Shown here: piece after piece, positions 7,043 to 61,827 of the stretch
Layout: each line of letters opens with the position of its first letter
Position numbering within the stretch: position 1 is the stretch's first letter
Sequence record: LT960552.1
Length of the DNA: 64,000 nt
Reading direction: 5' to 3' (one strand)
Position numbers and translations under genes: made by a program
Notes under the pieces: model-generated
Told to the model about the DNA's origin: nothing
Database searches by the model: none
The model's input: only the letters and a program-made list of their open reading frames with translations

Positions 7043-7156
7043 GCAGTGATCGTCTAGAGGCTTAGGACACGAAAAGCGATTCTTGATTAAGAATCTTACG
7101 GCATCCACAACTTTCATTCAACGAACGTAACGCAGGTTCGAATCCTGCTCACTGCA
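7043..7156 (+). ncRNA. CAGCA-module element 1: Glu-type tRNA body with anticodon arm replaced by module
   Basis: GCAGTGA/TCACTGC acceptor, D arm GTCTAGAGGCTTAGGAC, T arm GCAGG-TTCGAAT-CCTGC; insert GATTCTT..AAGAATC-TTACGGCAT. Confidence 0.8.
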
Positions 7157-7865: not shown

Positions 7866-7991
7866 GTGGGGTTAGCTCAGTTTGGTAGAGCAGCGAAAGA
7901 AACCAAAATGGAATCTTGAAAAGGATTCTAACAGCATTATATCTTCTACTGTAAATTCGCGGGTCGGTGTGTTCAAATCCACCACCCCACA
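7866..7991 (+). ncRNA. CAGCA-module element 2: tRNA interrupted by 51-nt module insert (GTA loop retained)
   Basis: GTGGGGT/ACCCCAC acceptor; GCGAA-[insert 7898-7948]-CTGTAAA-TTCGC; insert has GAATC..GATTC stem then TAACAGCAT. Confidence 0.85.
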
Positions 7992-8146
7992 CAAAATTGG
8001 TAAAAAAGCTCTGCGGTGGGACATTATATTCATCCACATGTTATTAGTTATTTTAAACAATCTGGTGAATATTTCAATGAATTGGATAAAACCGAACCAA
8101 GTAAATCAGATGTTAGTGGTGAACCAACAATAACTGGAAAATAAAA

Positions 8147-8875: not shown

Positions 8876-8996
8876 GGCGAGTTAGCTCAGTGGTAGAGCA
8901 CGTAGAAACCAAGGATTCTAGTACTAGATTCCCGCAGCAACAATAACTCATACTATGATAAAGTCGTGGTCGGGGGTTCAAATCCCTCACTCGCCG
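8876..8996 (+). ncRNA. CAGCA-module element 3: tRNA body with anticodon arm replaced by module
   Basis: GGCGAGT/ACTCGCC acceptor, canonical D and T arms; insert GGATTCTAG..CTAGATTCC-CGCAGCAA. Confidence 0.85.
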
Positions 8997-9061: not shown

Positions 9062-9694
9062 ATGAAACAATGTTTAAATTGTAATAATGAAATTGATGAT
9101 AAGAAAAAGTTTTGCAATAGTTCGTGTGCTGCAAAGTACAATAATTCTCACAGGATATTATCGGAAGAAACAAAATCTAAAATTTCTAAATCTTTAAAAG
9201 GTCGAGAAGTTAAATTTATTGAAACTGAAAATGTTAAGTCTGGAAGACTTCGAGCGGGTGCTAAACGGAGAGAGGCAGCATTGGAACAATTGATGAAACG
9301 TGATTTTAATGATTTAAGTTTGGTAAGAAAAAAGAAACGTGTTAGAATAGAGCAAGAAAATAAATGTTTCAGGTGTGGATTGAATGAATGGATGAATGAA
9401 CCATTAATATTAGAAGTTGATCATATAGATGGTGATAATACTAATAATATAAGAGAAAATTTACGTGCATTATGTCCAAATTGTCACTCACAAACTGACA
9501 CATGGAGAGGTACGAATTCACGAAAAGTAAAAATTTCTGATGATGATTTAGTATCTATATTAAAAGAATCTAAATCCATACGAGATGCAATTTTAAAGGC
9601 TGGTATGTCAATTACCAGTCATAGTTATAAAAGAATAAACTTATTAATTGAGAAATATCATATTAATTTTTTACTAAGGGTAAAGGAGGTATAA
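9062..9694 (+). CDS. HNH homing endonuclease
   Basis: LEVDHIDGDNTNN..NLRALCPNCH; N-terminal CxxC/FCxxxC and NUMOD3-like HILSEETKSKIS. Confidence 0.9.
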   Translation: MKQCLNCNNEIDDKKKFCNSSCAAKYNNSHRILSEETKSKISKSLKGREVKFIETENVKSGRLRAGAKRREAALEQLMKRDFNDLSLVRKKKRVRIEQENKCFRCGLNEWMNEPLILEVDHIDGDNTNNIRENLRALCPNCHSQTDTWRGTNSRKVKISDDDLVSILKESKSIRDAILKAGMSITSHSYKRINLLIEKYHINFLLRVKEV

Positions 9695-14149: not shown

Positions 14150-14620
14150 ATGGGGTTAGTTATGGGTGTGATAGTTATTTACTGTATATTAGGTTCCCTT
14201 GGTTTATTCACATTGTATATGTTTGTAGTAACATCTGCAATGGGGACAGAACGACTTAAAACTTCTCAGTACTTTATGTCTTCATTGAGTTATTGTGAAG
14301 AAGCAACAACTAAAATTAATTTGTTGATTGATAAGTATGAAGCAGGGCTTATTAAAGCAAAATTAAAAAATAATGTAATTGAATTTACTGAAATGGAAAA
14401 AAATATTCCAGCAGGTGAAATCTGGATAGCAAATAAATATTTTTCATATGGTCAGTTACATCGTTATGGTGCGAATGGAAATATCTCTTGGCAATGTAAT
14501 AAACCAAGTTTAAAAACTTTTAAACGAATTATTAAACTTGAAAAACAGCTAAACGTTGCTCATCAAGAACCAGTACCGAAAAGTGCAAAATCAACAGATG
14601 AGCCTGTAATTTTGGACTAA
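14150..14620 (+). CDS. membrane-anchored hypothetical protein
   Basis: N-terminal TM segment. Confidence 0.65.
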   Translation: MGLVMGVIVIYCILGSLGLFTLYMFVVTSAMGTERLKTSQYFMSSLSYCEEATTKINLLIDKYEAGLIKAKLKNNVIEFTEMEKNIPAGEIWIANKYFSYGQLHRYGANGNISWQCNKPSLKTFKRIIKLEKQLNVAHQEPVPKSAKSTDEPVILD

Positions 14621-14724
14621 GGGCGTAATTGCCCTATTTTAATTAAGAGATTTAAAATATACATTTGAGAACTTCATGGTATGGGAAAAGTAGTGAATTT
14701 CTTTCAAATGTTATCGTAAATATT

Positions 14725-14753
14725 TGAAACAACTAAAAAAATTGTGGTATAAT
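14725..14753 (+). promoter_or_regulatory. TGAAAC-N17-TATAAT promoter upstream of module element 4
   Basis: TGAAAC 14725-14730, TATAAT 14748-14753. Confidence 0.8.
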
Positions 14754-14760
14754 ATAGTAC

Positions 14761-14886
14761 ATAAGGCAACGGAATCTTACAGCAAAAATACTAATTTTGA
14801 TGAAAACGAAACGACGAGGTTCGAATCCTCACCCACGAATTGCCTTATTATTAGTGGGAGCATGGTGCTGGATAAACAAAGATTCC
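14761..14886 (+). ncRNA. CAGCA-module element 4: minimal permuted tRNA-like cargo
   Basis: GGAATCT-TACAGCAA ... GAGG-TTCGAAT-CCTC, CCCAC/GTGGG closed acceptor, short D-like hairpin ... AGATTCC. Confidence 0.8.
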
Positions 14887-14907
14887 AAAATTTAAGTTAG
14901 AAAAATA

Positions 14908-14936
14908 TGAAACAAATCAAAAATTTGTGGTATAAT
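14908..14936 (+). promoter_or_regulatory. TGAAAC-N17-TATAAT promoter
   Basis: TGAAAC 14908-14913, TATAAT 14931-14936. Confidence 0.8.
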
Positions 14937-14945
14937 ATAAGAAGT

Positions 14946-15056
14946 AAAGCGGGATGGTGATTGATGAAAGCTGTTATTTGATTCTAGACAATCATAATAA
15001 GCGAGTAATAGAACAGGGTTCTTAATATCACATGGGTTCAAATCCCTGTCGCTGCA
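14946..15056 (+). pseudogene. degenerate class II (Ser-like) tRNA-like RNA with elongated anticodon arm
   Basis: T-loop TTCAAAT, weak acceptor AGCG/CGCT, long stem TTATTTGATT/AATCATAATAA with 6-nt loop CTAGAC. Confidence 0.5.
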
Positions 15057-15057
15057 C

Positions 15058-15188
15058 AAAAGCAACAAATGAAATCTTACAGCAAACACAACATTTTTTC
15101 CTTGCATAGAAAAACGGTGGGGTTCGATTCCCCAACATCCAAGTTGCTTTTTAGGATGTGTCTGGACGACCGTATGACACAGATTTCA
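15058..15188 (+). ncRNA. CAGCA-module element 5: minimal permuted tRNA-like cargo with TGC loop hairpin
   Basis: TGAAATCT-TACAGCAA ... TGGGG-TTCGATT-CCCCA, ACATCC/GGATGT closed acceptor ... AGATTTCA. Confidence 0.8.
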
Positions 15189-15193
15189 GTACT

Positions 15194-15268
15194 GTTCCGT
15201 TAGACAAATTGGTATAGTCACCACACTTTCAATGTGGATTTCTGAGGGTTCAAGTCCCTCACGGAACG
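15194..15268 (+). tRNA. tRNA-Glu(TTC)
   Basis: CCACA-CTTTCAA-TGTGG; GTTCCGT/ACGGAAC. Confidence 0.93.
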
Positions 15269-15272
15269 CTAA

Positions 15273-15387
15273 AGGATTCGTACAGCAACAATAAACTCTT
15301 AAAATTCAATTGGTGAAAACAACCTTGCAGTTCGATTCTGCTTCCACAATGCGTGGATCTGGTGGTGGATAGAAAAAACCGAATCCT
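15273..15387 (+). ncRNA. CAGCA-module element 6: minimal permuted tRNA-like cargo
   Basis: AGGATTCG-TACAGCAA ... GCAG-TTCGATT-CTGC, TCCAC/GTGGA ... CGAATCCT. Confidence 0.8.
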
Positions 15388-15416
15388 GATTTTAATTAAG
15401 AAGTACTAAAGAATTT

Positions 15417-15578
15417 GATACACACGGATTTATACAGCAAACATAATCCTAAAATAAAACATACGATAATGTTATTAACTCGGAATTCGTTCCTTTCGTT
15501 AGTACTTGGCAACTTGGGTACTTAAATAAGTTGTATCACCTCATGTGTATCGGATTAGTGGTGATTATAAATAAATCC
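15417..15578 (+). ncRNA. CAGCA-module element 7: multi-hairpin cargo
   Basis: GGATTTAT-ACAGCAA ... ATAAATCC; internal hairpins CAACTT/AAGTTG and ATCACC/GGTGAT. Confidence 0.7.
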
Positions 15579-15614
15579 AGTAAATCAAAAGTACCTTTAT
15601 CGGTACTTTTTTAT

Positions 15615-15707
15615 GGAAGATTGGCAGAGTTTGGTTTATTGCACAGGTCTTGAGTACCTGCGGGGGTTAATAGCCCTCCGTGAGTTCGAATCTCACATCT
15701 TCCTCCA
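15615..15707 (+). tRNA. tRNA-Ser(TGA), loop CTTGAGT
   Basis: CAGGT-CTTGAGT-ACCTG, long variable arm, encoded CCA. Confidence 0.9.
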
Positions 15708-15726
15708 AATTTTATGTAGTACAATG

Positions 15727-15800
15727 GGGTACGTAGCTCAGTCTGGTAGAGCAGCCATGCGAAAACGGTGTGTCGGTGGTTCGAATCCACTCGCTCCCCA
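15727..15800 (+). pseudogene. degenerate tRNA (Phe-like, loop GCGAAAA, poorly paired anticodon stem)
   Basis: Canonical D and T arms; mismatched acceptor and anticodon stems. Confidence 0.55.
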
Positions 15801-15804
15801 CTAA

Positions 15805-15861
15805 GGAATCTAGCAGCAACCATAACCCAATCAAACTTTTAATTTGACAATTATGGATTCC
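15805..15861 (+). ncRNA. CAGCA-module element 8: isolated Lys(TTT) anticodon stem-loop cargo
   Basis: GGAATC-TAGCAGCAA-CCATAA..TCAAA-CTTTTAA-TTTGA..TTATGG-ATTCC. Confidence 0.85.
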
Positions 15862-15884
15862 AGTTATTTTAAGTTGAGAATAGC

Positions 15885-16289
15885 ATGACGGATAACGAAA
15901 AACTTGAAAATATATTAATTGAAGCATTGACAATAATTAATACTTCAACATATAATTTTGAATCGTCCAAAGACGATTCAAAATCTAGATTTGTCTTATG
16001 CGGTAAAAGAGCACAACTTAAGTTGTACTTTTCTGCCAAATATGGTGAATTAAGTATAGAATTTATTCATCACTTGATTGGAGATACCCTATCATTTCAG
16101 ATTAATTATTATGATGATTCGGACGAAGATGATGATTACCATAATTTATATGGTGAAATACGTATTCCAAGAACTGAAGAACAATACTTTCAGTACTACA
16201 CAATTCAAGATCATGTTTTCTCTTTAGAGTTTTATAAATTATTAGAAAACATAATGAACGAATTATTGGTAAAGTGGCAGAGCGGCTGA
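15885..16289 (+). CDS. hypothetical protein, EEQHFQ-motif family
   Basis: TEEQYFQ motif; 3' end overlaps tRNA-Ser. Confidence 0.7.
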   Translation: MTDNEKLENILIEALTIINTSTYNFESSKDDSKSRFVLCGKRAQLKLYFSAKYGELSIEFIHHLIGDTLSFQINYYDDSDEDDDYHNLYGEIRIPRTEEQYFQYYTIQDHVFSLEFYKLLENIMNELLVKWQSG

Positions 16290-16358
16290 ATGCAACCGCT
16301 TGGAAAGCGGTCAGGTTAGGTGATACTAGCCTCGTAGGTTCAAATCCTATCTTTACCG
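16268..16358 (+). tRNA. tRNA-Ser(GGA)
   Basis: ACCGC-TTGGAAA-GCGGT, long variable arm, G73. Confidence 0.93.
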
Positions 16359-16408
16359 CAAAAGTAATAACCTCCTTATTAAAGAATACATACCCATAGG
16401 AGAATATT

Positions 16409-16765
16409 ATGTACGAGAAAGATGATGGTCCATTAACAGATGAACAATTGTGTATTATTCGTGAAATGAATAGTCATTTAGAACAATCTAATTTAAGTAT
16501 AGACTTGGATTGGTTAAATAGTGAAAAACAAGGAAATGCAATGTATTACGACTACTATTACAAAATTGATGGTGAACTTCGTCGTCATACCAGTAATCAA
16601 GAGTTAACTGATGCGGAAATCAATAATATTTTTGGTGCAAGCAAACATGTGGTAATGCTTACTCCAATTGTTTTTGAACGTGAGATTAGTACGGAAGATA
16701 AGTCTGGTAATAAAATTAAAAGTACTGAAAAAGTACACGTAGGATTTTTAGGTTACGTGGAATAA
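16409..16765 (+). CDS. hypothetical protein
   Basis: GGGAG SD. Confidence 0.65.
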   Translation: MYEKDDGPLTDEQLCIIREMNSHLEQSNLSIDLDWLNSEKQGNAMYYDYYYKIDGELRRHTSNQELTDAEINNIFGASKHVVMLTPIVFEREISTEDKSGNKIKSTEKVHVGFLGYVE

Positions 16766-16810
16766 TATAATTTATTGGATTCGAAAGAATCCTTTTTAAG
16801 TGAGATGATT

Positions 16811-17035
16811 ATGGATAATCAACATAAAAAGATTAAAGGGTATCGTGACCTTTCTCAAAAAGAAATCGATGCAATGAATGAAATTAAACAACTAGCAGCT
16901 ACTGTTGAAGAGTTAATTGAAAAACTTGAAGGAACTGACTCTATTGATAAACGCTGGCTTGCTATTGCAAAAACAGATTTACAAAAAGGGTTCATGTCAG
17001 CAGTGCGAAGCGTGGCTAAACCAGATTCCTTTTGA
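16811..17035 (+). CDS. acb2: anti-CBASS cyclic-oligonucleotide sponge Acb2
   Basis: [17 protein letters not shown]-terminus and [23 protein letters not shown]-terminus match the Acb2 family. Confidence 0.9.
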
Positions 17036-17043
17036 GGAAAATA

Positions 17044-17424
17044 ATGCATACAATTGATAACCATGCTGATATAATTGATGATGTTATAACTGAAATACTT
17101 GAAATTTATACGTGTAAAGTTGAAGTTTATAATTATGGTAATTTGTTTTCACAGCACGGCTATAGTACTAAACATAATATAAATTATCATATAAATGCAA
17201 AGTACTATAATAATAATTCAAAAAATGGTAGACGAGCTAATAGTCTTGTGATAGAATTTAAATTCACTAACAGAGTTCCTAAAGGACTAAAAGATTATTA
17301 TAGATTATCAATACCTGAAATACAAAGTATTACAGAAGAACGACATTTTCAATTAATGTTAGTTACTGATGATATGTACTTGGATTATGAAGTTATAAAT
17401 AAATTACGTACACATATTATGTAA
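17044..17424 (+). CDS. hypothetical protein, EEQHFQ-motif family
   Basis: TEERHFQL motif. Confidence 0.7.
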   Translation: MHTIDNHADIIDDVITEILEIYTCKVEVYNYGNLFSQHGYSTKHNINYHINAKYYNNNSKNGRRANSLVIEFKFTNRVPKGLKDYYRLSIPEIQSITEERHFQLMLVTDDMYLDYEVINKLRTHIM

Positions 17425-17433
17425 AAAAGTTTT

Positions 17434-17487
17434 TAGAATCTAACAGCAATCAAAACTCATTGGATATATGAAAAAAAATAGATTCTA
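17434..17487 (+). ncRNA. CAGCA-module element 9: small hairpin cargo with GAT-centred 7-nt loop
   Basis: TAGAATCTA-ACAGCAA..TCAT-TGGATAT-ATGA..TAGATTCTA; 5 nt upstream of tRNA-Ile(GAT). Confidence 0.75.
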
Positions 17488-17492
17488 GTATT

Positions 17493-17564
17493 TGGGAATT
17501 ATCTCAGCGGTAGAGAGCACAACTGATAATTGTGAGGTCACTGGTTCAAATCCAGTATTCCCAA
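17493..17564 (+). tRNA. tRNA-Ile(GAT)
   Basis: CACAA-CTGATAA-TTGTG; TGGGAAT/ATTCCCA. Confidence 0.92.
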
Positions 17565-17663
17565 CTAAGTAGTTCAGTACTGAAATATGTACAGTGAAAT
17601 TATTCAACACTATAGGTAGAACTTTGAATGAATCAGTAAGCCTATAAGTAACTATATTAAATT

Positions 17664-17794
17664 TGGAATTCAACAGCAATCTTCACTTACTAAAAACAGC
17701 TACCTCACGGTTTGTAGGTTCGAGTCCTACCTTGTACTTTCGAGTACATGTGGTGAAATCGGTAAACACGGCTGTCCAAAAGAAATGAATTCCA
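17664..17794 (+). ncRNA. CAGCA-module element 10: circularly permuted Leu-type tRNA
   Basis: TGGAATTCA-ACAGCAA, 3' half (ACAGC, variable arm, GTAGG-TTCGAGT-CCTAC, TGTACT), TTCG, 5' half (AGTACA, TGGTGAAATCGGTAAACAC, GCTGT), TGAATTCCA. Confidence 0.9.
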
Positions 17795-17847
17795 GTATTA
17801 ATTAAGACATAAATATTCTTATACATTATTTTTGTAGGAATATAGAT

Positions 17848-18447
17848 ATGGAAATGAAAAAGTTGATGGAAGAGATATCTTCCATAATGGAAGGACAATT
17901 ACCAGGATATTATTATCACGGTAGCTCTAGACCAATATCAAATTTCAGTGATGAGTTTGTGGGTAGAGGTAATGATGAATATGGTCCAGGTATATATTTT
18001 AGTTCTGCACCAAATACTTCAATAGGTTATGCAAAAGATGGTGGTTCTAATGGAATGGTATATCAATGCGAACTGAATTTAAGAAAAGAACTATCTAAAA
18101 AAACTAAAATTAATAAAGCAGTACTATTTAAATTAATACAAAATACACCTGATGAAGATGCTTATACTAACTGGAATGAAAATAAAAATGTTGCTTATAG
18201 AACAGCATTACAGGGTTACATCGATGAAGGAAATATGTACGATGCATTAATGGGTGTTTGGTACGATTGGTATCGGGAGTATCCTGTTCAATTCGTAAGA
18301 TCATTAGTACAATTAGGATATGACGGATACATATATACTTTTGGAAGCGGTGAACGTTTTATAATAGTATATAATCCAGCAAGTATTAAAGTTATAAACA
18401 CTTTCAATCCAGAAGAAGCTAAGCAGAAACTACTTGGAAGTGATTAA
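17848..18447 (+). CDS. ADP-ribosyltransferase-like protein
   Basis: YYHGS and YGPGIYFSS motifs typical of H-Y-type ART folds; inference. Confidence 0.6.
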   Translation: MEMKKLMEEISSIMEGQLPGYYYHGSSRPISNFSDEFVGRGNDEYGPGIYFSSAPNTSIGYAKDGGSNGMVYQCELNLRKELSKKTKINKAVLFKLIQNTPDEDAYTNWNENKNVAYRTALQGYIDEGNMYDALMGVWYDWYREYPVQFVRSLVQLGYDGYIYTFGSGERFIIVYNPASIKVINTFNPEEAKQKLLGSD

Positions 18448-18453
18448 AAAATT

Positions 18454-18573
18454 TGGAATTCAACAGCAAATCATTCAAAACACGTAGCATGTCGTAGGTT
18501 CAAGTCCTACCAGTACTTAATTGTACTGTAGCTCAGTCGGGAGAGCAGCCACCTTAAAAAGAAATGAATTCCA
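18454..18573 (+). ncRNA. CAGCA-module element 11: circularly permuted Val-type tRNA
   Basis: TGGAATTCA-ACAGCAA, 3' half (ACAC-GTAGC, GTAGG-TTCAAGT-CCTAC, CAGTAC), TTAATT, 5' half (GTACTG, TAGCTCAGTCGGGAGAGC, GCCAC-CTT), TGAATTCCA. Confidence 0.9.
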
Positions 18574-18730
18574 GTATTAATTACAAAGAGAACCAATAAT
18601 GTACACTAATATTTTTGATATATTAAAAGATTTAACAGTGTTTGGAAAAGTAACATATCCAGTAAAATAAAATAATTAGGTTATTTCGAAGTTCTAAAAC
18701 AACGAAACATTTACTAACGTAAAAAGAATT

Positions 18731-18789
18731 TGGAATCTATCAGCAACCATAACCCAATCAAACATTTAATTTGACAATTATGGATTCCA
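18731..18789 (+). ncRNA. CAGCA-module element 12: Lys-type anticodon stem-loop cargo with variant loop CATTTAA
   Basis: Near-identical copy of element 8; loop differs at position 33. Confidence 0.85.
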
Positions 18790-18811
18790 GCCTATTTTTT
18801 GGAGTACAAAA

Positions 18812-19078
18812 ATGTATTATGCTCGGTTAGAACATCCTGATAATGGATATGAAATTGAAAGAATACATCTTAAAACCTTAGATTGTGAAAAGTACTATCC
18901 AGTATATTCAATTAATATTGGAAGTTGGAGTACCAGTGTATATCTTAGAGATGATGAGTATGAATATAATAGTGTAAACTTTGAGTTCTACATCAAAAAT
19001 GGAGATGAATATATTCTCGAAGATATTTTCTCAGACCCTGATTTAAATCCGTACTTGATAGAAGACGATGAAGAATAA
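18812..19078 (+). CDS. hypothetical protein
   Basis: GGAG SD. Confidence 0.65.
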   Translation: MYYARLEHPDNGYEIERIHLKTLDCEKYYPVYSINIGSWSTSVYLRDDEYEYNSVNFEFYIKNGDEYILEDIFSDPDLNPYLIEDDEE

Positions 19079-19092
19079 ATATCACAAATAAA

Positions 19093-19121
19093 TGAAACGA
19101 TTAAAAAATTTGTGGTATAAT
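19093..19121 (+). promoter_or_regulatory. TGAAAC-N17-TATAAT promoter upstream of tRNA-Asn
   Basis: TGAAAC 19093-19098, TATAAT 19116-19121. Confidence 0.8.
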
Positions 19122-19144
19122 ATAAGTAAGAAAAACAACAAGAT

Positions 19145-19217
19145 GGTTACGTAGCTCAGTGGTTAGAGCGTTCGCCTGTTAAGCGAGTGGTCGCTGGTTC
19201 AAATCCAGCCGTGATCG
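19145..19217 (+). tRNA. tRNA-Asn(GTT)
   Basis: TTCGC-CTGTTAA-GCGAG, G73. Confidence 0.93.
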
Positions 19218-19265
19218 CAAATTGATGTTTGGTATGGTTTAAAAATATAATAACCAAACATTATA

Positions 19266-19308
19266 AAGAATCTTTCAGCATTAACACGGTGAAAATATAT
19301 AGATTCTT
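19266..19308 (+). ncRNA. CAGCA-module element 13: minimal module
   Basis: AAGAATCT-TTCAGCAT..GTGAAAA..AGATTCTT. Confidence 0.65.
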
Positions 19309-19312
19309 GATT

Positions 19313-19389
19313 AGGAGATTAGCATAGATGGCCTAATGCACCGGTCTTTGAAATCGGTATCGGTGGTTCGAATCCACCATCTCCTGCCA
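19313..19389 (+). tRNA. tRNA-Gln(TTG)
   Basis: CCGGT-CTTTGAA-ATCGG; AGGAGAT/ATCTCCT-G-CCA. Confidence 0.92.
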
Positions 19390-19408
19390 ATTTAAGTAGA
19401 ATAATAGT

Positions 19409-19831
19409 ATGAAGTTATGTAAGAGATGTAATCAGAATAAGCCATTAGAAGCTTTTTCAAAAAATAAATCCAAAAAAGACGGATTACAAGTGAGTTGTAA
19501 GGAATGTTTTAAAACAATAAACAACAATTCATATAAAAATGAATCTGGTGAACGTCGAAGAAAAGTTGGCGAGACTCGTGATAGAATTAAAGCTATTAAT
19601 AGATCGATTATATCAGAACATCGATCAGTAAATCCATGTCACTTTTGTGGAGAAACCGAACATTGTTGTTTAGACTTTCATCACTTAGACCCTACTGTCA
19701 AAGATAAAGAAATATCTGTGTTGGTACATTATAGTACTGCTAGATTGGTAAAGGAAATAGCTAAATGTATAGTTATTTGCTCAAATTGTCACCGGAAACA
19801 CCATGCTGGTATTGAAGGTTACGAATTATAA
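19409..19831 (+). CDS. HNH endonuclease
   Basis: CKRC..CKEC N-terminus; CHFC..LDFHHLDP..KCIVICSNCHRKHH. Confidence 0.85.
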   Translation: MKLCKRCNQNKPLEAFSKNKSKKDGLQVSCKECFKTINNNSYKNESGERRRKVGETRDRIKAINRSIISEHRSVNPCHFCGETEHCCLDFHHLDPTVKDKEISVLVHYSTARLVKEIAKCIVICSNCHRKHHAGIEGYEL

Positions 19832-19839
19832 AGTTTTCA

Positions 19840-19966
19840 TTTCCTTGGTGAAAACAAGCTGGCATGATTCCCCCTGCTTGTAAAATTATCGAACGGGAAC
19901 CGCGTAGCACCGGTACAGGTCAGATTGTAAAGATCAAGTATGTACAGTACTGAGAGCGGCAGTACA
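19840..19966 (+). ncRNA. structured intergenic region, candidate ncRNA
   Basis: CTTG-GTGAAAA-CAAG, TTCCC/GGGAA, GTACTG/CAGTAC hairpins. Confidence 0.4.
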
Positions 19967-19972
19967 AAAAAT

Positions 19973-20054
19973 GCGGGATTAGCTCAGTGGTAGAGCACTT
20001 GCCTTCCAAGCAAGAGGCGAATAGGTTCCATCGGTTCGAATCCGATATTCCGCT
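19973..20054 (+). tRNA. tRNA-Gly(TCC) with enlarged variable region
   Basis: CTTGC-CTTCCAA-GCAAG, U73, 15-nt variable region. Confidence 0.85.
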
Positions 20055-20173
20055 CAAATTAAACAAACAATAAGGTAAATCCTATGATGCTATAGAAAAA
20101 CAGTACTGGTCCTCCTGATAACTTTAATTCAGAACAAAACACTAAATTAAATATTATCCAAAAGGAACATACT

Positions 20174-20500
20174 ATGTTAAACAAAGAAAAATATATTACT
20201 GTAAAAAATACTTGGAAATTAGAAAAAGAGCATAACATTTTCGACCATGTGGTTTATAATGTTATTCGTGGCCTACCATCAGATAATGGGTTTGCACCAA
20301 TTACTGATAAAGGAAAACTTCAAGCAAATAATAACGACCCGTATAATATGTACAACTATGCAGTTCTTGAATTGCATTATGAGTTGAATGAAAAACGATA
20401 CAATTATGAAAAAACAGTACAACATTATTCTAAACTATTTGGCATTGAATTTACACCTGAACTTATCGAAGTAGTACTTACTTTGATTAAAGTTAAATAA
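20174..20500 (+). CDS. hypothetical protein
   Basis: AAGGA SD. Confidence 0.7.
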   Translation: MLNKEKYITVKNTWKLEKEHNIFDHVVYNVIRGLPSDNGFAPITDKGKLQANNNDPYNMYNYAVLELHYELNEKRYNYEKTVQHYSKLFGIEFTPELIEVVLTLIKVK

Positions 20501-20508
20501 CAGAATTA

Positions 20509-20572
20509 AAGAATCCAACAGCACCCATAAATGAAATCAACTGTTAATTGAAAAATTCAAAAATGGATTCTT
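20509..20572 (+). ncRNA. CAGCA-module element 14: isolated Asn(GTT) anticodon stem-loop cargo
   Basis: AAGAATCC-AACAGCAC..TGAA..TCAA-CTGTTAA-TTGA..TTCA..GGATTCTT. Confidence 0.85.
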
Positions 20573-20646
20573 GTTTTTATTTGGAAGTCTCATGAAAGAT
20601 AATTTTTATGAAGATTTAAGATTTAGATATATTGAAGTACATGAAT

Positions 20647-20676
20647 TTGACGTTATAGCACTGAACGTGCTATAAT
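20647..20676 (+). promoter_or_regulatory. sigma70-like promoter with internal 9-bp inverted repeat
   Basis: TTGACG-N17-TATAAT; TTATAGCAC-N5-GTGCTATAA. Confidence 0.7.
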
Positions 20677-20680
20677 AGCT

Positions 20681-20754
20681 GGAGCCGTAGTTCAGTTGGT
20701 TAGAACGCTTGCCTGTCACGCAAGAGGCCGTGGGTTCAAGTCCCATCGGTTCCG
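20681..20754 (+). tRNA. tRNA-Asp(GTC)
   Basis: CTTGC-CTGTCAC-GCAAG, G73. Confidence 0.95.
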
Positions 20755-21038: not shown

Positions 21039-21390
21039 GGTAATAAAGAGTGTAAGGGTTAGTACTTAGTATCATATTCCCCCTCTACCTTCTTCCCCCA
21101 TTATTTGGGTTCTAGTCGTAGACACAATGTAGTACTTTATTACCCGCGAATTAATATTTTATTGTGGGGTGGTAAGAGTAAGATACCGATTCAAACAAGG
21201 GTCAGAAAGATCCACTTAACCCGTTTTGAAACAATAAAATATCCCGAAAGGGTGACGATGTGAATAGTGCATATCCTTGTAGTATGGGACAGTACTACAT
21301 TTTTATAAATAAATTGGAATAGAGCATGAGACTGCCCTCACTATTCGACGCTTTAAGTAGCTTTCTAGAGAGTACTTTCGGGTACTCACC
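21039..21390 (+). ncRNA. large structured non-coding region (one or two RNAs), unknown family
   Basis: 10-bp, 12-bp and 8-bp long-range stems, GAAA and TTCG tetraloop hairpins, no ORF. Confidence 0.7.
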
Positions 21391-21407
21391 CAAATAAAAT
21401 AAAACAT

Positions 21408-57238: not shown

Positions 57239-58387
57239 TTATACTACTATAATAATTTCTTCAAATATTAATACATTTGAACTGTGTGTAGTACTGTATC
57301 CACCATCAACTGCACCACATGCATATAACTTATTATTATCGGTTAATATATAAGTATTTTGATTACTACCAATAATTAATTTTATTATTGAACTTCCCCA
57401 AACAGGAGTAATTGAACTAAATGTTAACACATTAGTAGTATTTCCCCTACCTAACTGACCACTCACATTATAACCCGTATTCATGTAAATTCCATTATTA
57501 ACTAAATGTGTATTGATTGAATTAAGACCTACGAATAATTTTGAAATTGATGAACCGGCAGTTGTTATTTCAGTTAAAGTTTGATACACTGTTATTGTAC
57601 CACCATTTCCAAATTCACCATATATATTTGAACCACCTAATGTTGTACCTGTTATATATAATTTATTGTCCTTTATTACAAAGGTTGAAGTACCACCACT
57701 ACCAGCATCAAATGTGCTAATATTAGTCATTACCGAAATAAATGTTGTAGTACTTGTTGTGTTTCCGGTTCCTAACTGATATGAACCGTTAATACCACAA
57801 CCCAATAAGTTGTTTGATGAATCCTTTATGAAATTACCTCTAGCCTCTTTTACATCTGAACGAATAAATCTTAAAACATTCACTGAATTAGTATTGGTTC
57901 CATCACCAAAAGACGATATTGTAGTTACATTATTTTTCCCTGAACAATAATATGAACCATCTTTTAGTACTACTTGCATTTTTGCACCGTAATGGAAATA
58001 TATATCAGAAATTTGTGCGTCAGTTGTGATACCTACTGGACTGAATAAATCAGTTCTATTGACAAATGTAGTATTAAAATTTAAAGTGTCTGAACCAGAT
58101 AGTACTCTTGTATCTCCAGCGAACCAAAATTGATTACTAATGTCAATGTATAGTACTACTTGTGTACTTCCAGATGCCCATACGTCTTTAACACTAGAAC
58201 GTATAAAAATAAATTTAGGTACTGGATTAGTATGCCCTAATCCTAATTCACCATTTCTATTTGAACCAGCACCATATAAGTCACCACCAGTGGTTAAGTA
58301 TAATACCGCATTGGCTGAAGTGACAAGTTTCTTTATTCCTGGTATCGGTAATATATTAGTATTGCTTATTATTGGAAAAGGTAACAT
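57239..58387 (-). CDS. RCC1/BLIP-II-like beta-propeller protein (MLPF family)
   Basis: MLPFPII start; repeated LYGAGSN..GELGLG motifs. Confidence 0.8.
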   Translation of the reverse strand: MLPFPIISNTNILPIPGIKKLVTSANAVLYLTTGGDLYGAGSNRNGELGLGHTNPVPKFIFIRSSVKDVWASGSTQVVLYIDISNQFWFAGDTRVLSGSDTLNFNTTFVNRTDLFSPVGITTDAQISDIYFHYGAKMQVVLKDGSYYCSGKNNVTTISSFGDGTNTNSVNVLRFIRSDVKEARGNFIKDSSNNLLGCGINGSYQLGTGNTTSTTTFISVMTNISTFDAGSGGTSTFVIKDNKLYITGTTLGGSNIYGEFGNGGTITVYQTLTEITTAGSSISKLFVGLNSINTHLVNNGIYMNTGYNVSGQLGRGNTTNVLTFSSITPVWGSSIIKLIIGSNQNTYILTDNNKLYACGAVDGGYSTTHSSNVLIFEEIIIVV

Positions 58388-58397
58388 TTTATTCTCC

Positions 58398-59528
58398 TTA
58401 TACTGTTACTAATGTTATTGGTTGGAATGTTAGTACATTGGAACTAGGAGTTACGTTAAATCCACCATTTACCCCACCACACGCAACTAAACTGTTATCT
58501 TCGTATACTATATATGTATTTAAGTTACATGAGAAAATAGTAGCAGTACTAGGTACTGTAATATTCGGTACTAATCCAAATGTATAAACTACTCCTGAAC
58601 TTCCTCGTCCTAACTGACCGTTAGTACCATTACCAGTATTCATATACCCACCAGAATTGTGTACATGAGTTAATACATTACCAACGTTTTGTACTAATTG
58701 TGTTATCCCACTCCCAGCTTGTACTATATTGGTTAATGTACTATAAGTAACAGCAGAAGTACTTCCATCACCAAATTCACCGTATATACCTAATGATGAA
58801 CCCATTATATATAATAATCCATCCTTAACGCAAAATATTGACCTAAGTCCAGACCGGATTAATGATACTCCTGTACTCAATTGCACGTATGTCGTACTCC
58901 CTGAACTCACTACCGATGACCCCAACTGCATATAAGTGTTTGTTCCACATCCATGTAAATTATTATCAAAATCCAATATGTAATTACCATTAACCGATAA
59001 TACATTATTTCTAATAAATCTAAATGCATTGAATGAATCAACGTTAGTACCATCACCAAAAGATGTACTAGTACTTATATTGTTCTTACCCGTGCAATAC
59101 AATCTACCATCATTAAGCAACACACTCATCTTCGCATTAGAATAGAAATCTATATCCTTTATGTCCAATATGGATATGTTCGCAACAGAAAACATTGTGG
59201 TTATATTCACAAAACCATTAGTTGATCCAGCCGATCCAGTGTATATATAGGGATTGCCAGAAAACATTACTTTACCATCAGTGTCCATAACTATTATAGC
59301 TGCACTCGATAAACTAGCATAAATATCCCTTACTCCTGTCCTTATTAATATAAATTGTGGCTTTGCCCCTGTACTACCCAACTCACCTTGTACGTTTGCT
59401 CCCGCTCCGTATAAATTACCTGTAGCAGTTAAATATAATAATGCAGTACTACTAGAAACAAATTTCTTTATGTTCTTTGGATATACAGGTGATGACTTTG
59501 TATTACTTATTATCGGAAATGGTAACAT
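58398..59528 (-). CDS. RCC1/BLIP-II-like beta-propeller protein (MLPF family)
   Basis: Close paralog of adjacent gene. Confidence 0.8.
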   Translation of the reverse strand: MLPFPIISNTKSSPVYPKNIKKFVSSSTALLYLTATGNLYGAGANVQGELGSTGAKPQFILIRTGVRDIYASLSSAAIIVMDTDGKVMFSGNPYIYTGSAGSTNGFVNITTMFSVANISILDIKDIDFYSNAKMSVLLNDGRLYCTGKNNISTSTSFGDGTNVDSFNAFRFIRNNVLSVNGNYILDFDNNLHGCGTNTYMQLGSSVVSSGSTTYVQLSTGVSLIRSGLRSIFCVKDGLLYIMGSSLGIYGEFGDGSTSAVTYSTLTNIVQAGSGITQLVQNVGNVLTHVHNSGGYMNTGNGTNGQLGRGSSGVVYTFGLVPNITVPSTATIFSCNLNTYIVYEDNSLVACGGVNGGFNVTPSSNVLTFQPITLVTV

Positions 59529-59537
59529 AATTCCTCC

Positions 59538-60638
59538 TTATAATGGTAATGTTATTTGTGCGAATTTTCCTGAAGCAGATGTCGTTCCAGGTAATAATCC
59601 CGCTGTACCACCTGTGCCATATACTTTCCCATTCTTAACGTAATATACACAATTGTTAGTACTCACTAATTGACTTATACCTATGTCTGTACCAGTAGCT
59701 GTACTGTCGATATTACACTTAGTATATACAAATACCTGACTTTGGGTTAATCCTATATATGAACCCTGACCTGTACCATATATCCCAGCAGCCGTTCCTA
59801 GTACTGAACCATACGTAACACATGCACTCATTAATGGCTGAACTCCTGCACTCGGTACTACTACTGTACTCAATGCAGTCTTGTTACTCGTACCACCATT
59901 ACCTAATACTCCTAATGCACCATTACCTACAGTGTACCAACCATTACTCTTTAATACATATAATGTTAAATTACCTGCCTGTACACCTATAACACTACTC
60001 CCATTAGTCACTGCTACCCATTGCATCTGATTAGCCGCCGATGTGTTTACTATCTGATAATAATTGTTTACCCCTGTACCATATAATACATTACTGGTAT
60101 CTAAATAATATGAAGTACTTATCCCTAAACTTATCGATAAACAAAGGCTACTCCTTAATACAGGTAATGCATAATTACCACCTACATATCCTACCCATGA
60201 ACCACTCATGTATAATGCATTGTTACTCAGTACAAAACTTAATGTATTACTATTGCACTGCAAATCACGTACTGAATGAGTAGTCCCTGAAATCGTTAAA
60301 TCAAATAATATAGTACTTGTACTAGTGAAACTTGTACCTGAACCTGATAACCATTCAGTCTTCCCACTGTAATATAACTTGTTATCCTGCTGTACTACCA
60401 TCGTGTAACTAAATTGTCCTCCACACCATACATCCTGTACGTTACTCTTTATCTTAAACCAACTGCTTAATGAACCAGTATTACCTAAACCAAACTGACC
60501 ATATGCATTAGTACCTAAACCGTATAAATCTCCATTAGTATATAGTACTACTATGAAATTATACCCAGTACTTATCTTCTTTATTGTCCCTGTAGGTATT
60601 ATATTACCGTACTTTACTATCACCGGAAATGGTAACAT
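59538..60638 (-). CDS. RCC1/BLIP-II-like beta-propeller protein (MLPF family)
   Basis: LYGLGTNAYGQFGLG repeats. Confidence 0.8.
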   Translation of the reverse strand: MLPFPVIVKYGNIIPTGTIKKISTGYNFIVVLYTNGDLYGLGTNAYGQFGLGNTGSLSSWFKIKSNVQDVWCGGQFSYTMVVQQDNKLYYSGKTEWLSGSGTSFTSTSTILFDLTISGTTHSVRDLQCNSNTLSFVLSNNALYMSGSWVGYVGGNYALPVLRSSLCLSISLGISTSYYLDTSNVLYGTGVNNYYQIVNTSAANQMQWVAVTNGSSVIGVQAGNLTLYVLKSNGWYTVGNGALGVLGNGGTSNKTALSTVVVPSAGVQPLMSACVTYGSVLGTAAGIYGTGQGSYIGLTQSQVFVYTKCNIDSTATGTDIGISQLVSTNNCVYYVKNGKVYGTGGTAGLLPGTTSASGKFAQITLPL

Positions 60639-60649
60639 CTCTTCTCTCC

Positions 60650-61816
60650 TTAAAATGGTAATGTTAATTCTATAAATGATGTGCCTAATGTATTAGACGT
60701 TATACCCAATGAAGTACTACCACACCCCAATATTATATTATTCATCCTTCCTATATAACTCGTGTATGTCCCTATCCTTATTATATCTGTACTAGATATT
60801 AATACAGGTACTATCGTATAACTTCCTATTACTGATGTACTTACTCCTAATCCCAATGCACCACCATTGTTATTACCACCACATACATGTAATTTGTCAT
60901 CTATTCCAATGTAACTCGATGTCGGCGGAGATGATATGAATACCATATCTTTACTAGGAGAACTCTTGTATTGAACTGGCAACTGTACCTGTATCATTAA
61001 TCCAGTACTGTTCGTATTCGTGAAACTCGTATTACCATCACCAAATGTACCAGAATCATTAGAACCTAAACAATATCCAGTACCAGATGTATAGGCTATT
61101 ACCTTTGACTCACTTACCCTTACCCCTAATATCGGATCTGTAACTGTACTGAACATACGTGTTAATGATAATATACTCGCATTTAATACCCCTCCCTCTG
61201 TACTACTCTGTAAACAATATGTCGCGTTCCTTCCCGCTCCCCATACAGTTCCATCAGTTAACATCAGTACAGTACTGTTCCCTGTACTCGTTACATCTAA
61301 TACATTACTGCGTATGAATGTTAATGCCTTATAACCTACCGCAACTCCTGTACCTAACTCCCCGTACCTGTTTAATCCTATACCGTATAAATCATTATTG
61401 TTCATCAATACCATCGTGGTGAAACCAAAACTTATCTTCTTTATCTGTGATATGTCTATAGTACTAAAATATGAACTTACATCAGTAAACACCGTTACTT
61501 CATTCGATGTACCACCTAAATTAAATACATCCCTAGCACCACTTATATATACTTTGTTAGTATTCGTTACTATCATTGTACTCGAAGCATTACATGACAT
61601 CAATCGTACATCATTCCTTATGTATGTCAGTACGTTAAATCTGTTTACCTTATTACCTACACCTAATTGTCCACTCGTGTTATATCCACTCGTGTAAAAT
61701 AATCCAGTATTCAATAATACTATAGTCTGAAATAAATTACTGTATCCAGTTTGTATATCCTTGATGAACGCAGGTTCAGGTATATTTGTGTTGCTTATTA
61801 TCGGAAATGGTAACAT
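60650..61816 (-). CDS. RCC1/BLIP-II-like beta-propeller protein (MLPF family)
   Basis: GYNTSGQLGVG, GLNRYGELGTG repeats. Confidence 0.8.
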   Translation of the reverse strand: MLPFPIISNTNIPEPAFIKDIQTGYSNLFQTIVLLNTGLFYTSGYNTSGQLGVGNKVNRFNVLTYIRNDVRLMSCNASSTMIVTNTNKVYISGARDVFNLGGTSNEVTVFTDVSSYFSTIDISQIKKISFGFTTMVLMNNNDLYGIGLNRYGELGTGVAVGYKALTFIRSNVLDVTSTGNSTVLMLTDGTVWGAGRNATYCLQSSTEGGVLNASILSLTRMFSTVTDPILGVRVSESKVIAYTSGTGYCLGSNDSGTFGDGNTSFTNTNSTGLMIQVQLPVQYKSSPSKDMVFISSPPTSSYIGIDDKLHVCGGNNNGGALGLGVSTSVIGSYTIVPVLISSTDIIRIGTYTSYIGRMNNIILGCGSTSLGITSNTLGTSFIELTLPF

Positions 61817-61827
61817 CTCTTCTCTCC

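What the first reader, a model, noticed from the sequence alone, without database searches (positions are those of the whole stretch)
17664..18573. Two circularly permuted tRNA genes broken in the anticodon loop and sealed at the acceptor end
Seen in sequence: element 10 (17664-17794) reads 3' half then 5' half of a Leu-type tRNA with the acceptor stem capped by TTCG. Element 11 (18454-18573) does the same for a Val-type tRNA (D loop GGGAGAGC) capped by TTAATT. Joining the end of the 5' half (GCCAC-CTT, 18555) to the start of the 3' half (ACAC-GTAGC, 18480) would rebuild a canonical Val loop CU-UAC-AC. For element 10 the analogous join gives CC-UAA-AA, matching its Leu body. Established: permuted tRNA genes processed through circular intermediates are known in some algae and archaea, and anticodon nucleases cut around positions 33-35. 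Inference: these are either non-chargeable mimics or precursors matured by ligation at the anticodon followed by opening of the acceptor loop.
Basis: partly seen in the sequence, partly recalled or inferred. Interest (0 to 1): 0.88.

Follow-up and report, generated by a model that had tools for sequence, protein, structure and literature searches.

The report
Phage Y-RNA-like tRNA mimics
The two "permuted tRNAs" are real, but they are best read as tRNA-shaped non-coding RNAs from a large, unannotated phage RNA family that is genetically tied to a phage homologue of the Ro60 RNA-binding protein, not as precursors of working tRNAs.

Summary
The window is Yersinia jumbo phage fHe-Yen9-03. Both elements exist as described: 3' half, capped acceptor hairpin, then 5' half. 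All helices are kept by compensatory changes in four other phage genera.

The claimed rebuilt anticodon loops fail. The Val join exists only in this phage, at chance level. The Leu join has no U33.

Each element is closed by a terminal stem (P1) whose 5' strand is followed by an unpaired CAGCAA at a fixed 9-nt register. This frame recurs at least 11 times in the window's tRNA cluster, around tRNA-like, hairpin or other inserts. In inverted order it also sits inside the anticodon stem of three otherwise normal tRNA genes.

The frame is linked to a gene:
- In 75 of 82 unrelated viral contigs, frames lie on the gene strand, and about a third of the elements end within 150 nt upstream of a DUF2828/DUF7788-vWA gene.
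- An AlphaFold model of that protein matches Ro60 over its full length.
- This phage encodes the protein beside an RNA ligase, about 200 kb away.
- Rfam's YrlA model matches element 11's tRNA-like core below threshold.

Verdict: these are divergent Y-RNA/YrlA-like tRNA mimics of a phage Ro60-like RNP, probably used in counter-defence. Protein binding is inferred, not shown. A protein-dependent intron or circular-RNA reading is not excluded.

The parts
17665..17793 (+). Element 10. A P-type frame RNA with a class-II (Leu-like) permuted tRNA-like insert. Order: P1 5' strand 17665-17672, CAGCAA bulge 17673-17679, linker, 3' half, TTCG-capped acceptor hairpin 17731-17750, 5' half, A-rich linker, P1 3' strand 17786-17793. 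Tail AGUAUU 17794-17799.
   Evidence: Covariation in 5 genera.
18455..18572 (+). Element 11. A P-type frame RNA with a class-I permuted tRNA-like insert. P1 18455-18462 / 18565-18572, bulge 18463-18469, T arm 18494-18510, capped acceptor 18511-18528, D arm 18531-18546. The anticodon stem carries a conserved C.A mismatch.
   Evidence: (YrlA 36.2 bits).
14771..14886 (+). P-type frame RNA with a T arm, a capped acceptor-like hairpin and a small D-like arm. It lies about 10 nt downstream of an extended -10 promoter.
15071..15187 (+). P-type frame RNA with a tRNA-like insert. It ends 6 nt before tRNA-Glu.
15274..15386 (+). P-type frame RNA with a T arm and a capped hairpin.
   Evidence: Hit by model R1, which was built only from Ro-adjacent elements of unrelated phages: 24.8 bits, E 0.011.
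15426..15578 (+). P-type frame enclosing a 130-nt conserved insert of unknown fold.
15805..15861 (+). Short P-type frame RNA.
   Evidence: 34.1 bits, E 1.4e-4.
17435..17486 (+). Short P-type frame RNA. It ends 6 nt before tRNA-Ile.
   Evidence: 34.4 bits, E 1.2e-4.
18732..18788 (+). Short P-type frame RNA.
   Evidence: 18.3 bits.
19267..19307 (+). Short P-type frame RNA. It ends 5 nt before tRNA-Gln.
   Evidence: 27.4 bits, E 0.003.
20510..20571 (+). Short P-type frame RNA.
   Evidence: 44.9 bits, E 8e-7.
7043..7156 (+). H-type. A Glu-like tRNA gene with the frame, in inverted order, inserted after nt 28. Excision gives CGUUC-AUUCAAC-GAACG, anticodon UCA.
7866..7992 (+). H-type. A tRNA-like gene with the frame inserted at 31/32. 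Excision gives GCGAA-CUGUAAA-UUCGC, anticodon GUA. The T arm is atypical.
8876..8996 (+). H-type. A tRNA gene with the frame inserted after nt 28. Excision gives CGACU-AUGAUAA-AGUCG, anticodon GAU.

Best explanation
Elements 10 and 11 are stable non-coding RNAs of the Y-RNA type, built from two modules.

(a) A frame. The RNA's two ends pair into stem P1, and the 5' strand is followed by an unpaired (A)CAGCAA at a fixed 9-nt register. A G lies 2 nt after the 3' strand. I infer that this frame is the docking site for the phage's Ro60-like protein. That protein is g179 of fHe-Yen9-03, a DUF2828/DUF7788-vWA protein encoded next to an Rnl2-family RNA ligase.

(b) A closed, circularly permuted tRNA mimic. 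It has a T arm, a D arm and a sealed acceptor stem. Its anticodon stem leads into the frame. This is the layout of YrlA.

The RNAs are co-transcribed with the tRNA cluster. They would be released by the tRNA-processing cuts that flank them. The RNP probably uses the tRNA-shaped module to engage a tRNA-recognising partner, such as a ligase, an exonuclease or a host tRNA-directed nuclease, as part of counter-defence or RNA repair.

Shown here: the structure, its conservation, family membership and the gene linkage.
Inferred: protein binding, stability of the RNA and its role.
For: - The structure is real and conserved.
- Rfam YrlA matches the core of element 11 across model positions 24-84.
- The frame recurs on one strand only. 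At CAGCAH sites, a complement lies downstream in 63/182 cases, against 23/182 upstream and 12/165 on the minus strand.
- The frame occurs in Eneladusvirus, Mimasvirus, Felixounavirus wV8, Enterococcus Schiekvirus and Lak-A1, with different P1 sequences but the same register.
- In Enterococcus phage EFDG1, three frame RNAs sit immediately upstream of gp143.
- In 82 IMG/VR loci centred on homologues of that protein, 75 carry frames on the gene strand: 193 elements against 28 on the other strand. Sixty-three end 0-150 nt upstream of the gene. P1 pairs 1-7 covary.
- A covariance model built only from those unrelated loci finds the window's frames, with E values down to 8e-7.
- The protein model (pLDDT 88, pTM 0.88) matches Ro60 1yvr (E 1.3e-7, TM 0.61) and Thermus phage Ro60 9l5y over its full length.
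- The same gene, next to an RNA ligase (PF09414), is in this phage's genome at record coordinates 100482-103718.
- A sub-threshold, full-length YrlA hit lies next to the homologue in Mycobacterium phage Snenia.
- Bas63 gp130, a Ro60-like protein upstream of tRNAs, counters the Ppl defence system. Its authors guessed that some of the 'tRNAs' are Y RNAs (PMC11482910).
Against: - No binding data exist. The link between frame and protein is by genomic association only.
- In this phage the RNAs lie about 200 kb from the Ro-like gene, and no TROVE or Ro-like ORF is in the window.
- The published Rsr-binding motif GNCGAAN0-1G (PMC4201824) is absent.
- The YrlA score is half of Rfam's gathering score.
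- Model R1 does not reach elements 10 and 11 themselves, because their inserts are long.
- The frame also interrupts real tRNA genes, which fits an intron at least as well as a docking site.
Confidence: 0.62

Rival explanations
1. The frame is a protein-dependent mini-intron or processing module. The Ro-like protein, with a nuclease, marks the frame. The frame is cut out, and the Rnl2-type ligase seals the ends. H-type genes then yield working tRNAs. P-type elements, including elements 10 and 11, yield circular RNAs or are by-products or regulators of the same machinery.
For: - In 9 of 12 H-type genes, removing one contiguous 41-51 nt segment restores a perfect 5-bp anticodon stem plus a U33/R37 loop. 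The shuffle probability is about 0.003-0.004 each. The resulting anticodons fit the tRNA bodies: Lys UUU, Glu UUC.
- The same holds in unrelated contigs: Asn GUU, Thr UGU, with the junction ACG|UAR.
- The exon ends abut as a nick inside a duplex, which from general knowledge is the preferred substrate of Rnl2-type ligases.
- An Rnl2-family ligase flanks the Ro-like gene here and in 8 of 82 loci.
- An intron-less orthologue exists: window 15727-15799 against CBB L003:17754-17872.
- H-type genes lie 122-1548 nt upstream of the Ro-like gene in 45 of 82 loci, and none lie on the other strand.
Against: - No nuclease has been identified.
- Rfam reports no ribozyme family up to E 10.
- For elements 10 and 11 the exon ends are the open end of a complete stem. 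No loop is conserved, so ligation would not give a tRNA-like anticodon arm.
- The distance from each splice site to P1 varies from 6 to 12 nt, so there is no ruler.
Confidence: 0.22
2. The elements are permuted pre-tRNAs that are ligated at the anticodon, opened at the acceptor cap, and charged as Leu and Val tRNAs.
For: - The half order is permuted, and the same frame flanks splice-like junctions in real tRNA genes.
- One Enterococcus-phage P-type element (L053:4189-4306) can give a perfect arm ACGGC-CUAUGGA-GCCGU. It also has a 7-bp acceptor plus a 5-nt spacer. The shuffle probability is 0.026.
Against: - The Val loop is not conserved, even in the 91%-identical BF copy.
- The Leu join lacks U33.
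- The caps are tetraloops with no discriminator or spacer.
- The mismatch in the anticodon stem is conserved.
- The phage already has tRNA-Leu(UAA) and tRNA-Val(UAC).
- There is no BHB motif.
Confidence: 0.04
3. The frames are cis-acting punctuation, stability or insulator elements of the polycistronic tRNA-mRNA transcripts, read by host RNases. Their proximity to the Ro-like gene only reflects that this gene sits in or next to tRNA clusters.
For: - Elements abut tRNAs within 3-7 nt and precede ORFs.
- No neighbouring protein is shared between distant phages.
Against: - Sixty-three elements end within 150 nt upstream of the Ro-like gene.
- The frame is present in Lak-A1 at that position, with no tRNA within 6 kb.
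- CAGCAA is invariant across hosts as different as Enterococcus, Prevotella and enterobacteria.
Confidence: 0.1
4. The frames are DNA-level repeats, such as recombination or homing-endonuclease sites that shuffle tRNA cassettes.
For: HNH and NUMOD3 endonuclease genes are interspersed in the cluster.
Against: - P1 covaries while its sequence changes completely between lineages.
- The orientation is strictly strand-specific.
Confidence: 0.02

Closest known systems
YrlA (Y RNA-like A, Rfam RF02553) of bacteria and some phages, partner of Rsr/Ro60 (Chen et al. 2014, PMC4201824)
   Same: - A terminal stem formed by the RNA's own ends.
- A permuted tRNA-like domain with T arm, D arm and sealed acceptor stem, and no CCA end.
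- An irregular 'anticodon' stem.
- Family-level linkage to a Ro60 homologue gene.
- A partial covariance-model match.
   Different: - The score is 36 bits against a gathering score of 69 bits.
- The GNCGAA motif is replaced by an unpaired CAGCAA after the stem.
- The partner protein belongs to the DUF2828/DUF7788 family, not Pfam TROVE.
- There are 11 or more copies scattered through a tRNA cluster far from the protein gene.
- The same module also occurs inside real tRNA genes.
Thermus phage phiLo Ro60 with Yrl1/Yrl2 (PMC12135203)
   Same: A phage Ro60 homologue with phage-encoded stem-bulge-stem RNAs directly upstream of its gene. The protein is a structural match (9l5y).
   Different: The phiLo RNAs carry CGAA bulges. 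No tRNA-like module is reported in the passages read.
Bas63 (Felixounavirus) gp130, a Ro60-like counter to the Ppl defence system (PMC11482910)
   Same: It belongs to the same genus as wV8 gp047, a homologue found here, and it lies directly upstream of the tRNA cluster. Its authors suspected that some of the 'tRNAs' are Y RNAs.
   Different: No RNA was identified there. The frame family found here in wV8 is a concrete candidate.
Circularly permuted tRNA genes of Cyanidioschyzon merolae and some archaea
   Same: The 3' half precedes the 5' half, and leader and trailer pair.
   Different: Those have a BHB motif, a canonical anticodon loop after joining, and an acceptor spacer that can be processed. 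None of these is met here.
'Enigmatic' tRNA introns of Lak megaphages (Devoto et al. 2019, PMC6784885)
   Same: Short, highly conserved, non-group-I insertions in phage tRNA genes. Lak-A1 carries a frame element about 140 nt upstream of a weak Ro-like homologue.
   Different: I did not examine the Lak intron sequences, so whether they are the same is untested.

Membership tests
YrlA / bacterial Y RNA | tRNA-like domain with T and D arms and a closed acceptor-like stem, in permuted order | tested here: met
YrlA / bacterial Y RNA | Reaches the Rfam RF02553 gathering score (69 bits) | tested here: not met
   Element 11 scores 36.2 bits, on model positions 24-84 only. Element 10 has no hit.
YrlA / bacterial Y RNA | GNCGAAN0-1G motif near the 5' end (putative Rsr contact) | tested here: not met
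   The motif here is ACAGCAA, unpaired, after P1. The motif definition comes from PMC4201824.
YrlA / bacterial Y RNA | Encoded next to a Ro60 orthologue | tested here: inconclusive
   Not met in this window. There is no such ORF of 200 aa or more, and the gene lies about 200 kb away. Met for the family as a whole: 75 of 82 loci, plus EFDG1, wV8 and Lak-A1.
YrlA / bacterial Y RNA | Physically bound by the Ro60 homologue | not testable with these tools
   This needs RIP, EMSA or a structure.
Ro60/TROVE proteins (partner) | HEAT-repeat ring plus vWA fold | tested here: met
   AF2 pLDDT 88. Foldseek 1yvr E 1.3e-7, TM 0.61. 9l5y TM 0.50-0.54.
Ro60/TROVE proteins (partner) | Sequence match to Pfam TROVE or to solved Ro60 chains | tested here: not met
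   Pfam gives DUF2828, DUF7788 and VWA_2. Searching the PDB with the sequence or a profile finds nothing.
Circularly permuted tRNA genes | 3' half upstream of 5' half in one transcript | tested here: met
Circularly permuted tRNA genes | Joining the halves restores a canonical, conserved anticodon stem-loop | tested here: not met
Circularly permuted tRNA genes | Bulge-helix-bulge motif at the leader/trailer junction | tested here: not met
   By inspection: an 8-bp P1 with a 7-nt one-sided bulge and no 3-4-3 motif.
Circularly permuted tRNA genes | Intervening sequence at the acceptor end that can be processed (discriminator, spacer) | tested here: not met
   The caps are TTCG, TTAATT, ATCG and CTAG with 0-1 spare nt.
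Known self-cleaving ribozymes / group I introns | Match to an Rfam model | tested here: not met
   No such family up to E 10 across 14600-20700.
Two-piece (permuted) tmRNA | tRNA-like domain plus a tag reading frame | tested here: not met
   ARAGORN and Rfam call no tmRNA in the window.

The most novel reading that the evidence does not exclude
The P1/CAGCAA frame is a new, protein-dependent tRNA intron system of bacteriophages.
- A Ro60-like protein recognises the frame.
- An unidentified nuclease removes the frame from the 5' strand of the anticodon stem.
- An Rnl2-family ligase seals the resulting nick in the duplex, which would give Rnl2 a natural substrate.
- Permuted copies such as elements 10 and 11 are turned into circular tRNA-shaped RNAs.
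- The 'enigmatic' Lak megaphage tRNA introns are the same system.
Probability: 0.2. Interest if true: 0.95.

Novelty: new variant of a known kind. Interest (0 to 1): 0.74.

Why it matters
**What is already known.** Y RNAs and their Ro60 partners are known in animals, bacteria and a few phages. What they do in phages is barely known.

**What this finding adds.**
- It identifies a concrete, easily searchable RNA signature: a terminal stem followed by CAGCAA at a fixed register. The signature marks the likely RNA partners of a very widespread phage Ro60-like protein.
- That protein occurs in 712 isolate genomes and in at least 506 relatives in IMG/VR. It spans Felixounavirus, Herelleviridae, KVP40-like phages, jumbo phages and mycobacteriophages.
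- One member of the protein family was recently shown to counter an anti-phage defence system.

**What it may explain.**
- Annotators keep calling odd, over-long or 'intron-containing' tRNAs with inconsistent anticodons in these phages. Insertion of the frame into real tRNA genes would account for this.
- The same module is grafted into the anticodon stem of genuine tRNAs. This opens a directly testable question: are they tRNA-Y-RNA chimeras, or a new class of bacterial-virus tRNA introns?

Tried and rejected
- **Hammerhead, hairpin, twister or HDV-like ribozyme.** I checked the core motifs by eye. Rfam at E up to 10 finds none.
- **T4 species 1 and 2 RNAs (rnaC, rnaD).** I fetched them. rnaC has a T arm, but neither has the frame, so they are not the same family by inspection.
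- **Shared neighbouring protein genes between distant phages.** Local blastp of ORFs found none.
- **Cellular genomes.** An exact scan for the commonest short element in 185,579 species found nothing. The pattern was narrow, so this is weak negative evidence.
- **Exact 14-mer scan of IMG/VR.** Most hits were chance, but the scan yielded the first non-jumbo members.
- **Sequence or profile search of the Ro-like protein against the PDB.** Nothing was found. Only the fold comparison shows the relationship.
- **Pairing between the two linkers, or a pseudoknot between CAGCAA and the acceptor cap loop.** This is seen only in the subgroup represented by element 15071-15187, not generally.
- **Supplementary tables of two papers.** They are not held.
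- **Model R1.** It cannot span the 110-nt inserts of elements 10 and 11. Their membership rests on the identical frame sequence and register, and on sibling elements.
Full report
**Source and setting.** The window is 100% identical to Yersinia phage fHe-Yen9-03 (LT960552.1, 352.6 kb, Eneladusvirus). Window position equals record position minus 288,596. It covers the phage's tRNA cluster. ARAGORN tRNAs and Rfam. G+C is about 32%. The two elements are not annotated in any of the records examined.

**The observation.**
- Each reads: 3' strand of an anticodon-type stem, variable region, T arm, acceptor hairpin closed by a short loop, D arm, 5' strand of the anticodon-type stem.
- Element 10 has a class-II variable arm and is modestly closest to the phage's tRNA-Leu(UAA).
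- Element 11 is a generic class-I body, not specifically Val.
- Orthologues exist in Serratia phage BF, Cronobacter phage GAP32, Xanthomonas phage XbC2 and Pectobacterium phage CBB.
- In alignments of 8 and 5 sequences, 94.4% and 92.5% of cells pair, against 21-43% when partners are slid. Thirteen and 8 pairs change on both sides.
- A C.A (or A.C) mismatch in the middle of the anticodon-type stem is kept in 5 of 8 sequences.
- Rfam's YrlA model matches 18487-18549 at 36.2 bits, E 3e-5, over model positions 24-84. These positions are the T arm, capped stem and D arm.

**What fails in the observation.** There is no broken anticodon loop. I enumerated every way of joining the sequence after nt 26 to the sequence before the variable region.
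- With the stems fixed, about 27% of linker shuffles give some U33/R37 loop.
- BF, which is 91% identical, gives only UAA. GAP32, XbC2 and CBB give other triplets.
- For element 10 no canonical loop exists, because the proposed join has C33.
- The acceptor caps in relatives are UUCG, AUCG or CUAG, with no room for a discriminator.

**The frame.** Both elements are enclosed by GGAATTCA...TGAATTCC. ACAGCAA follows the 5' strand directly, and AGUAUU follows the 3' strand.
- The same arrangement recurs at 14771, 15071, 15274, 15426, 15805, 17435, 18732, 19267 and 20510.
- The first P1 base is always 9 nt before CAGCAA.
- The P1 sequence varies (AGAATC, GGAATC, GGAATT, GAAATC, GGATTC, GGATTT), always with its complement downstream.
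- The arrangement is strand- and direction-specific: 63/182 downstream, against 23/182 upstream and 12/165 on the minus strand.
- Inserts range from a 4-bp hairpin to tRNA-like bodies and a 130-nt unknown domain.
- Several elements end 5-7 nt before a tRNA, or start 2-4 nt after one. Ordinary tRNA processing would therefore release them.
- Strong extended -10 promoters drive the + strand. No terminators separate the units.

**The same frame inside real tRNA genes.** Three genes in the window (7043, 7866, 8876), and their orthologues or paralogues in CBB, GAP32 and XbC2, carry the frame in inverted order. The order is: P1 3' strand, then the 'tail' as a hairpin loop, then P1 5' strand, CAGCAA, and a pyrimidine-rich linker. 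The frame sits between the D arm and the T arm.
- Other annotators called these genes intron-containing tRNAs with mutually inconsistent anticodons.
- Removing one contiguous 41-51 nt segment, after nt 28, 29 or 31, restores a perfect 5-bp anticodon stem and a U33/R37 loop in 9 of 12 genes. One more gene needs one mismatch. The shuffle probability is 0.002-0.004 each.
- The resulting anticodons suit the tRNA bodies. CUUUUAA sits in Lys-like bodies and AUUUCAC in Glu-like bodies.
- In the window the Glu-like gene reads AUUCAAC, anticodon UCA.
- The same pattern holds in unrelated contigs: CUGUUAA (Asn), CUUGUAA (Thr), with the junction ACG|UAR.
- The P-type elements are therefore circular permutations of this arrangement at the P1 loop.

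**Distribution.** An exact 14-mer scan of IMG/VR and scripted checks found frame elements in tRNA clusters of contigs unrelated to the jumbo phages. One of these contigs is an Enterococcus Schiekvirus. Felixounavirus wV8 has four elements with P1 = GACC.../...GGTC.

**The protein link.**
- In EFDG1, three frame RNAs, two of them tRNA-like, lie directly upstream of gp143. This protein has 510 aa and matches Pfam DUF2828 + DUF7788 + VWA_2 and PHROG 850 'RNA-binding protein'.
- tblastn finds this protein in 712 phage records. These include Eneladusvirus, Felixounavirus, Listeria A511, KVP40-like Vibrio phages, Campylobacter and Aeromonas phages, and mycobacteriophages, where it is annotated 'Ro-like RNA binding protein'.
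- In Eneladusvirus the gene sits two genes from an RNA ligase (PF09414 plus an OB domain). The same cluster is in fHe-Yen9-03 at record coordinates 100482-103718.
- In wV8 it immediately precedes the tRNA cluster.
- A profile search returned 82 IMG/VR loci, out of at least 506 relatives.
  - Seventy-five have frames on the gene strand: 193 elements, against 28 on the other strand.
  - Sixty-three end 0-150 nt upstream of the start codon.
  - The consensus is 5'-AGRNRCNNA-CAGCAA...GNYNYCU-YG-3', with P1 covarying.
  - Seventeen of 72 distinct upstream elements carry a T-loop motif.
- H-type tRNAs lie 122-1548 nt upstream in 45 of 82 loci, and none lie on the other strand. A homologous ligase follows the gene in 8 loci.
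- Rfam has no family for these RNAs.
- A covariance model built only from these unrelated loci finds the window's short frames (44.9, 34.4, 34.1 and 27.4 bits) and the tRNA-like element at 15271-15390.
- Lak-A1 has a frame about 140 nt upstream of its weak homologue.

**Is the protein Ro60-like?** Sequence searches against the PDB fail. An AlphaFold model from 24 homologues (pLDDT 88, pTM 0.88) has an all-helical N-terminal part and a vWA domain. Its four best PDB matches, all full-length, are Ro60 structures: 1yvr (E 1.3e-7, TM 0.61/0.60), 9nep, 9nfa and the Thermus phage protein 9l5y. In Mycobacterium phage Snenia a full-length, sub-threshold YrlA hit (39.3 bits) lies just downstream of the homologue. 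Its 5' end reads CACAGGAA where the model has cggCgaA. This suggests a continuum between CGAA-type and CAGCAA-type RNAs.

**Interpretation.**
- By architecture, by the partial model match and by family-level linkage to a Ro60 homologue, elements 10 and 11 are Y-RNA-like tRNA mimics.
- They fail formal membership of Rfam YrlA on score and on the binding motif. I therefore file them as a new variant, not a member.
- Binding of the frame to the protein is inferred.
- A counter-defence role is suggested by three observations:
  - Bas63 gp130 counters the Ppl system (PMC11482910).
  - The ligase sits next to the Ro-like gene.
  - The window's own context includes an Acb2/Tad1-type gene and an ART-PolyVal ADP-ribosyltransferase gene, which lies exactly between the two elements.
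- The main open alternative is that the frame is excised. That would make H-type genes spliced tRNAs and P-type elements sources of circular RNA. The geometry, a nick in a duplex next to an Rnl2-family ligase, makes this attractive. But no nuclease is known, and elements 10 and 11 do not rebuild a loop.

**Literature.** I found no report of permuted tRNAs in phages, none of DUF2828 in phages, and none of this intron type. The 'enigmatic' tRNA introns of Lak phages (PMC6784885) may be related.

Noticed in passing
window 7043-7156: A Glu-like tRNA gene whose anticodon after excision is UCA (opal-reading). Its orthologues in CBB and GAP32 read UUC. Together with the amber-reading tRNA(CUA) at 1645-1720, this hints at stop-codon suppression by this phage.
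   Followed up: partly
window 15727-15799 vs L003:17754-17872: An odd tRNA-like gene with a 10-nt 'anticodon' loop. Its CBB orthologue carries the frame insertion after nt 28, so the insertion is polymorphic in presence or absence between genera.
   Followed up: partly
window 17848-18447: The ORF g454, which lies between the two elements, is an ART-PolyVal ADP-ribosyltransferase (PF18760, E 1.6e-11). The gene and flanking frame RNAs are also present in CBB and GAP32.
   Followed up: partly
window 16811-17035: g452 matches the Acb2/Tad1 hairpin domain (PF24729, E 8e-20). This domain marks anti-CBASS/anti-Thoeris sponge proteins, and the gene lies inside the tRNA cluster.
   Followed up: no
window 15426-15578: A frame element with a 130-nt insert of unknown fold, conserved in BF, CBB, GAP32 and XbC2.
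   Followed up: no
window 21040-21400 and 19840-19970: Non-coding stretches upstream of tRNA-Arg and tRNA-Gly, locally G+C-rich and apparently structured. They have no ORF and no Rfam hit at gathering score.
   Followed up: no
window 19973-20055: tRNA-Gly(UCC) is 82-83 nt long, with about 9 extra nt in the variable/T region.
   Followed up: no
L123:8940-9000, 9130-9190, 9315-9372: In EFDG1 each of the three frame RNAs is preceded by a repeated unit of about 50 nt (GGTTTTG...TAGTTCC..CCT..AGG..GGAAC ATAA) that can form a nested hairpin. It could be a promoter or a further RNA module.
   Followed up: no
L126:1970-2320, L129:774-1126, L142:3958-4346: Phage-encoded tmRNA genes lie a few kb upstream of the Ro-like gene in several contigs.
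   Followed up: no
window 57239-62988 (- strand): Five tandem ORFs of about 380 aa lie here. The two that were scanned are RCC1-repeat proteins.
   Followed up: no
L122:1409-1672 (T4 rnaC, rnaD): T4 species 1 RNA has a clear T arm. Species 2 contains ACAGCAGAAAC. Neither shows the P1/CAGCAA frame by eye.
   Followed up: partly
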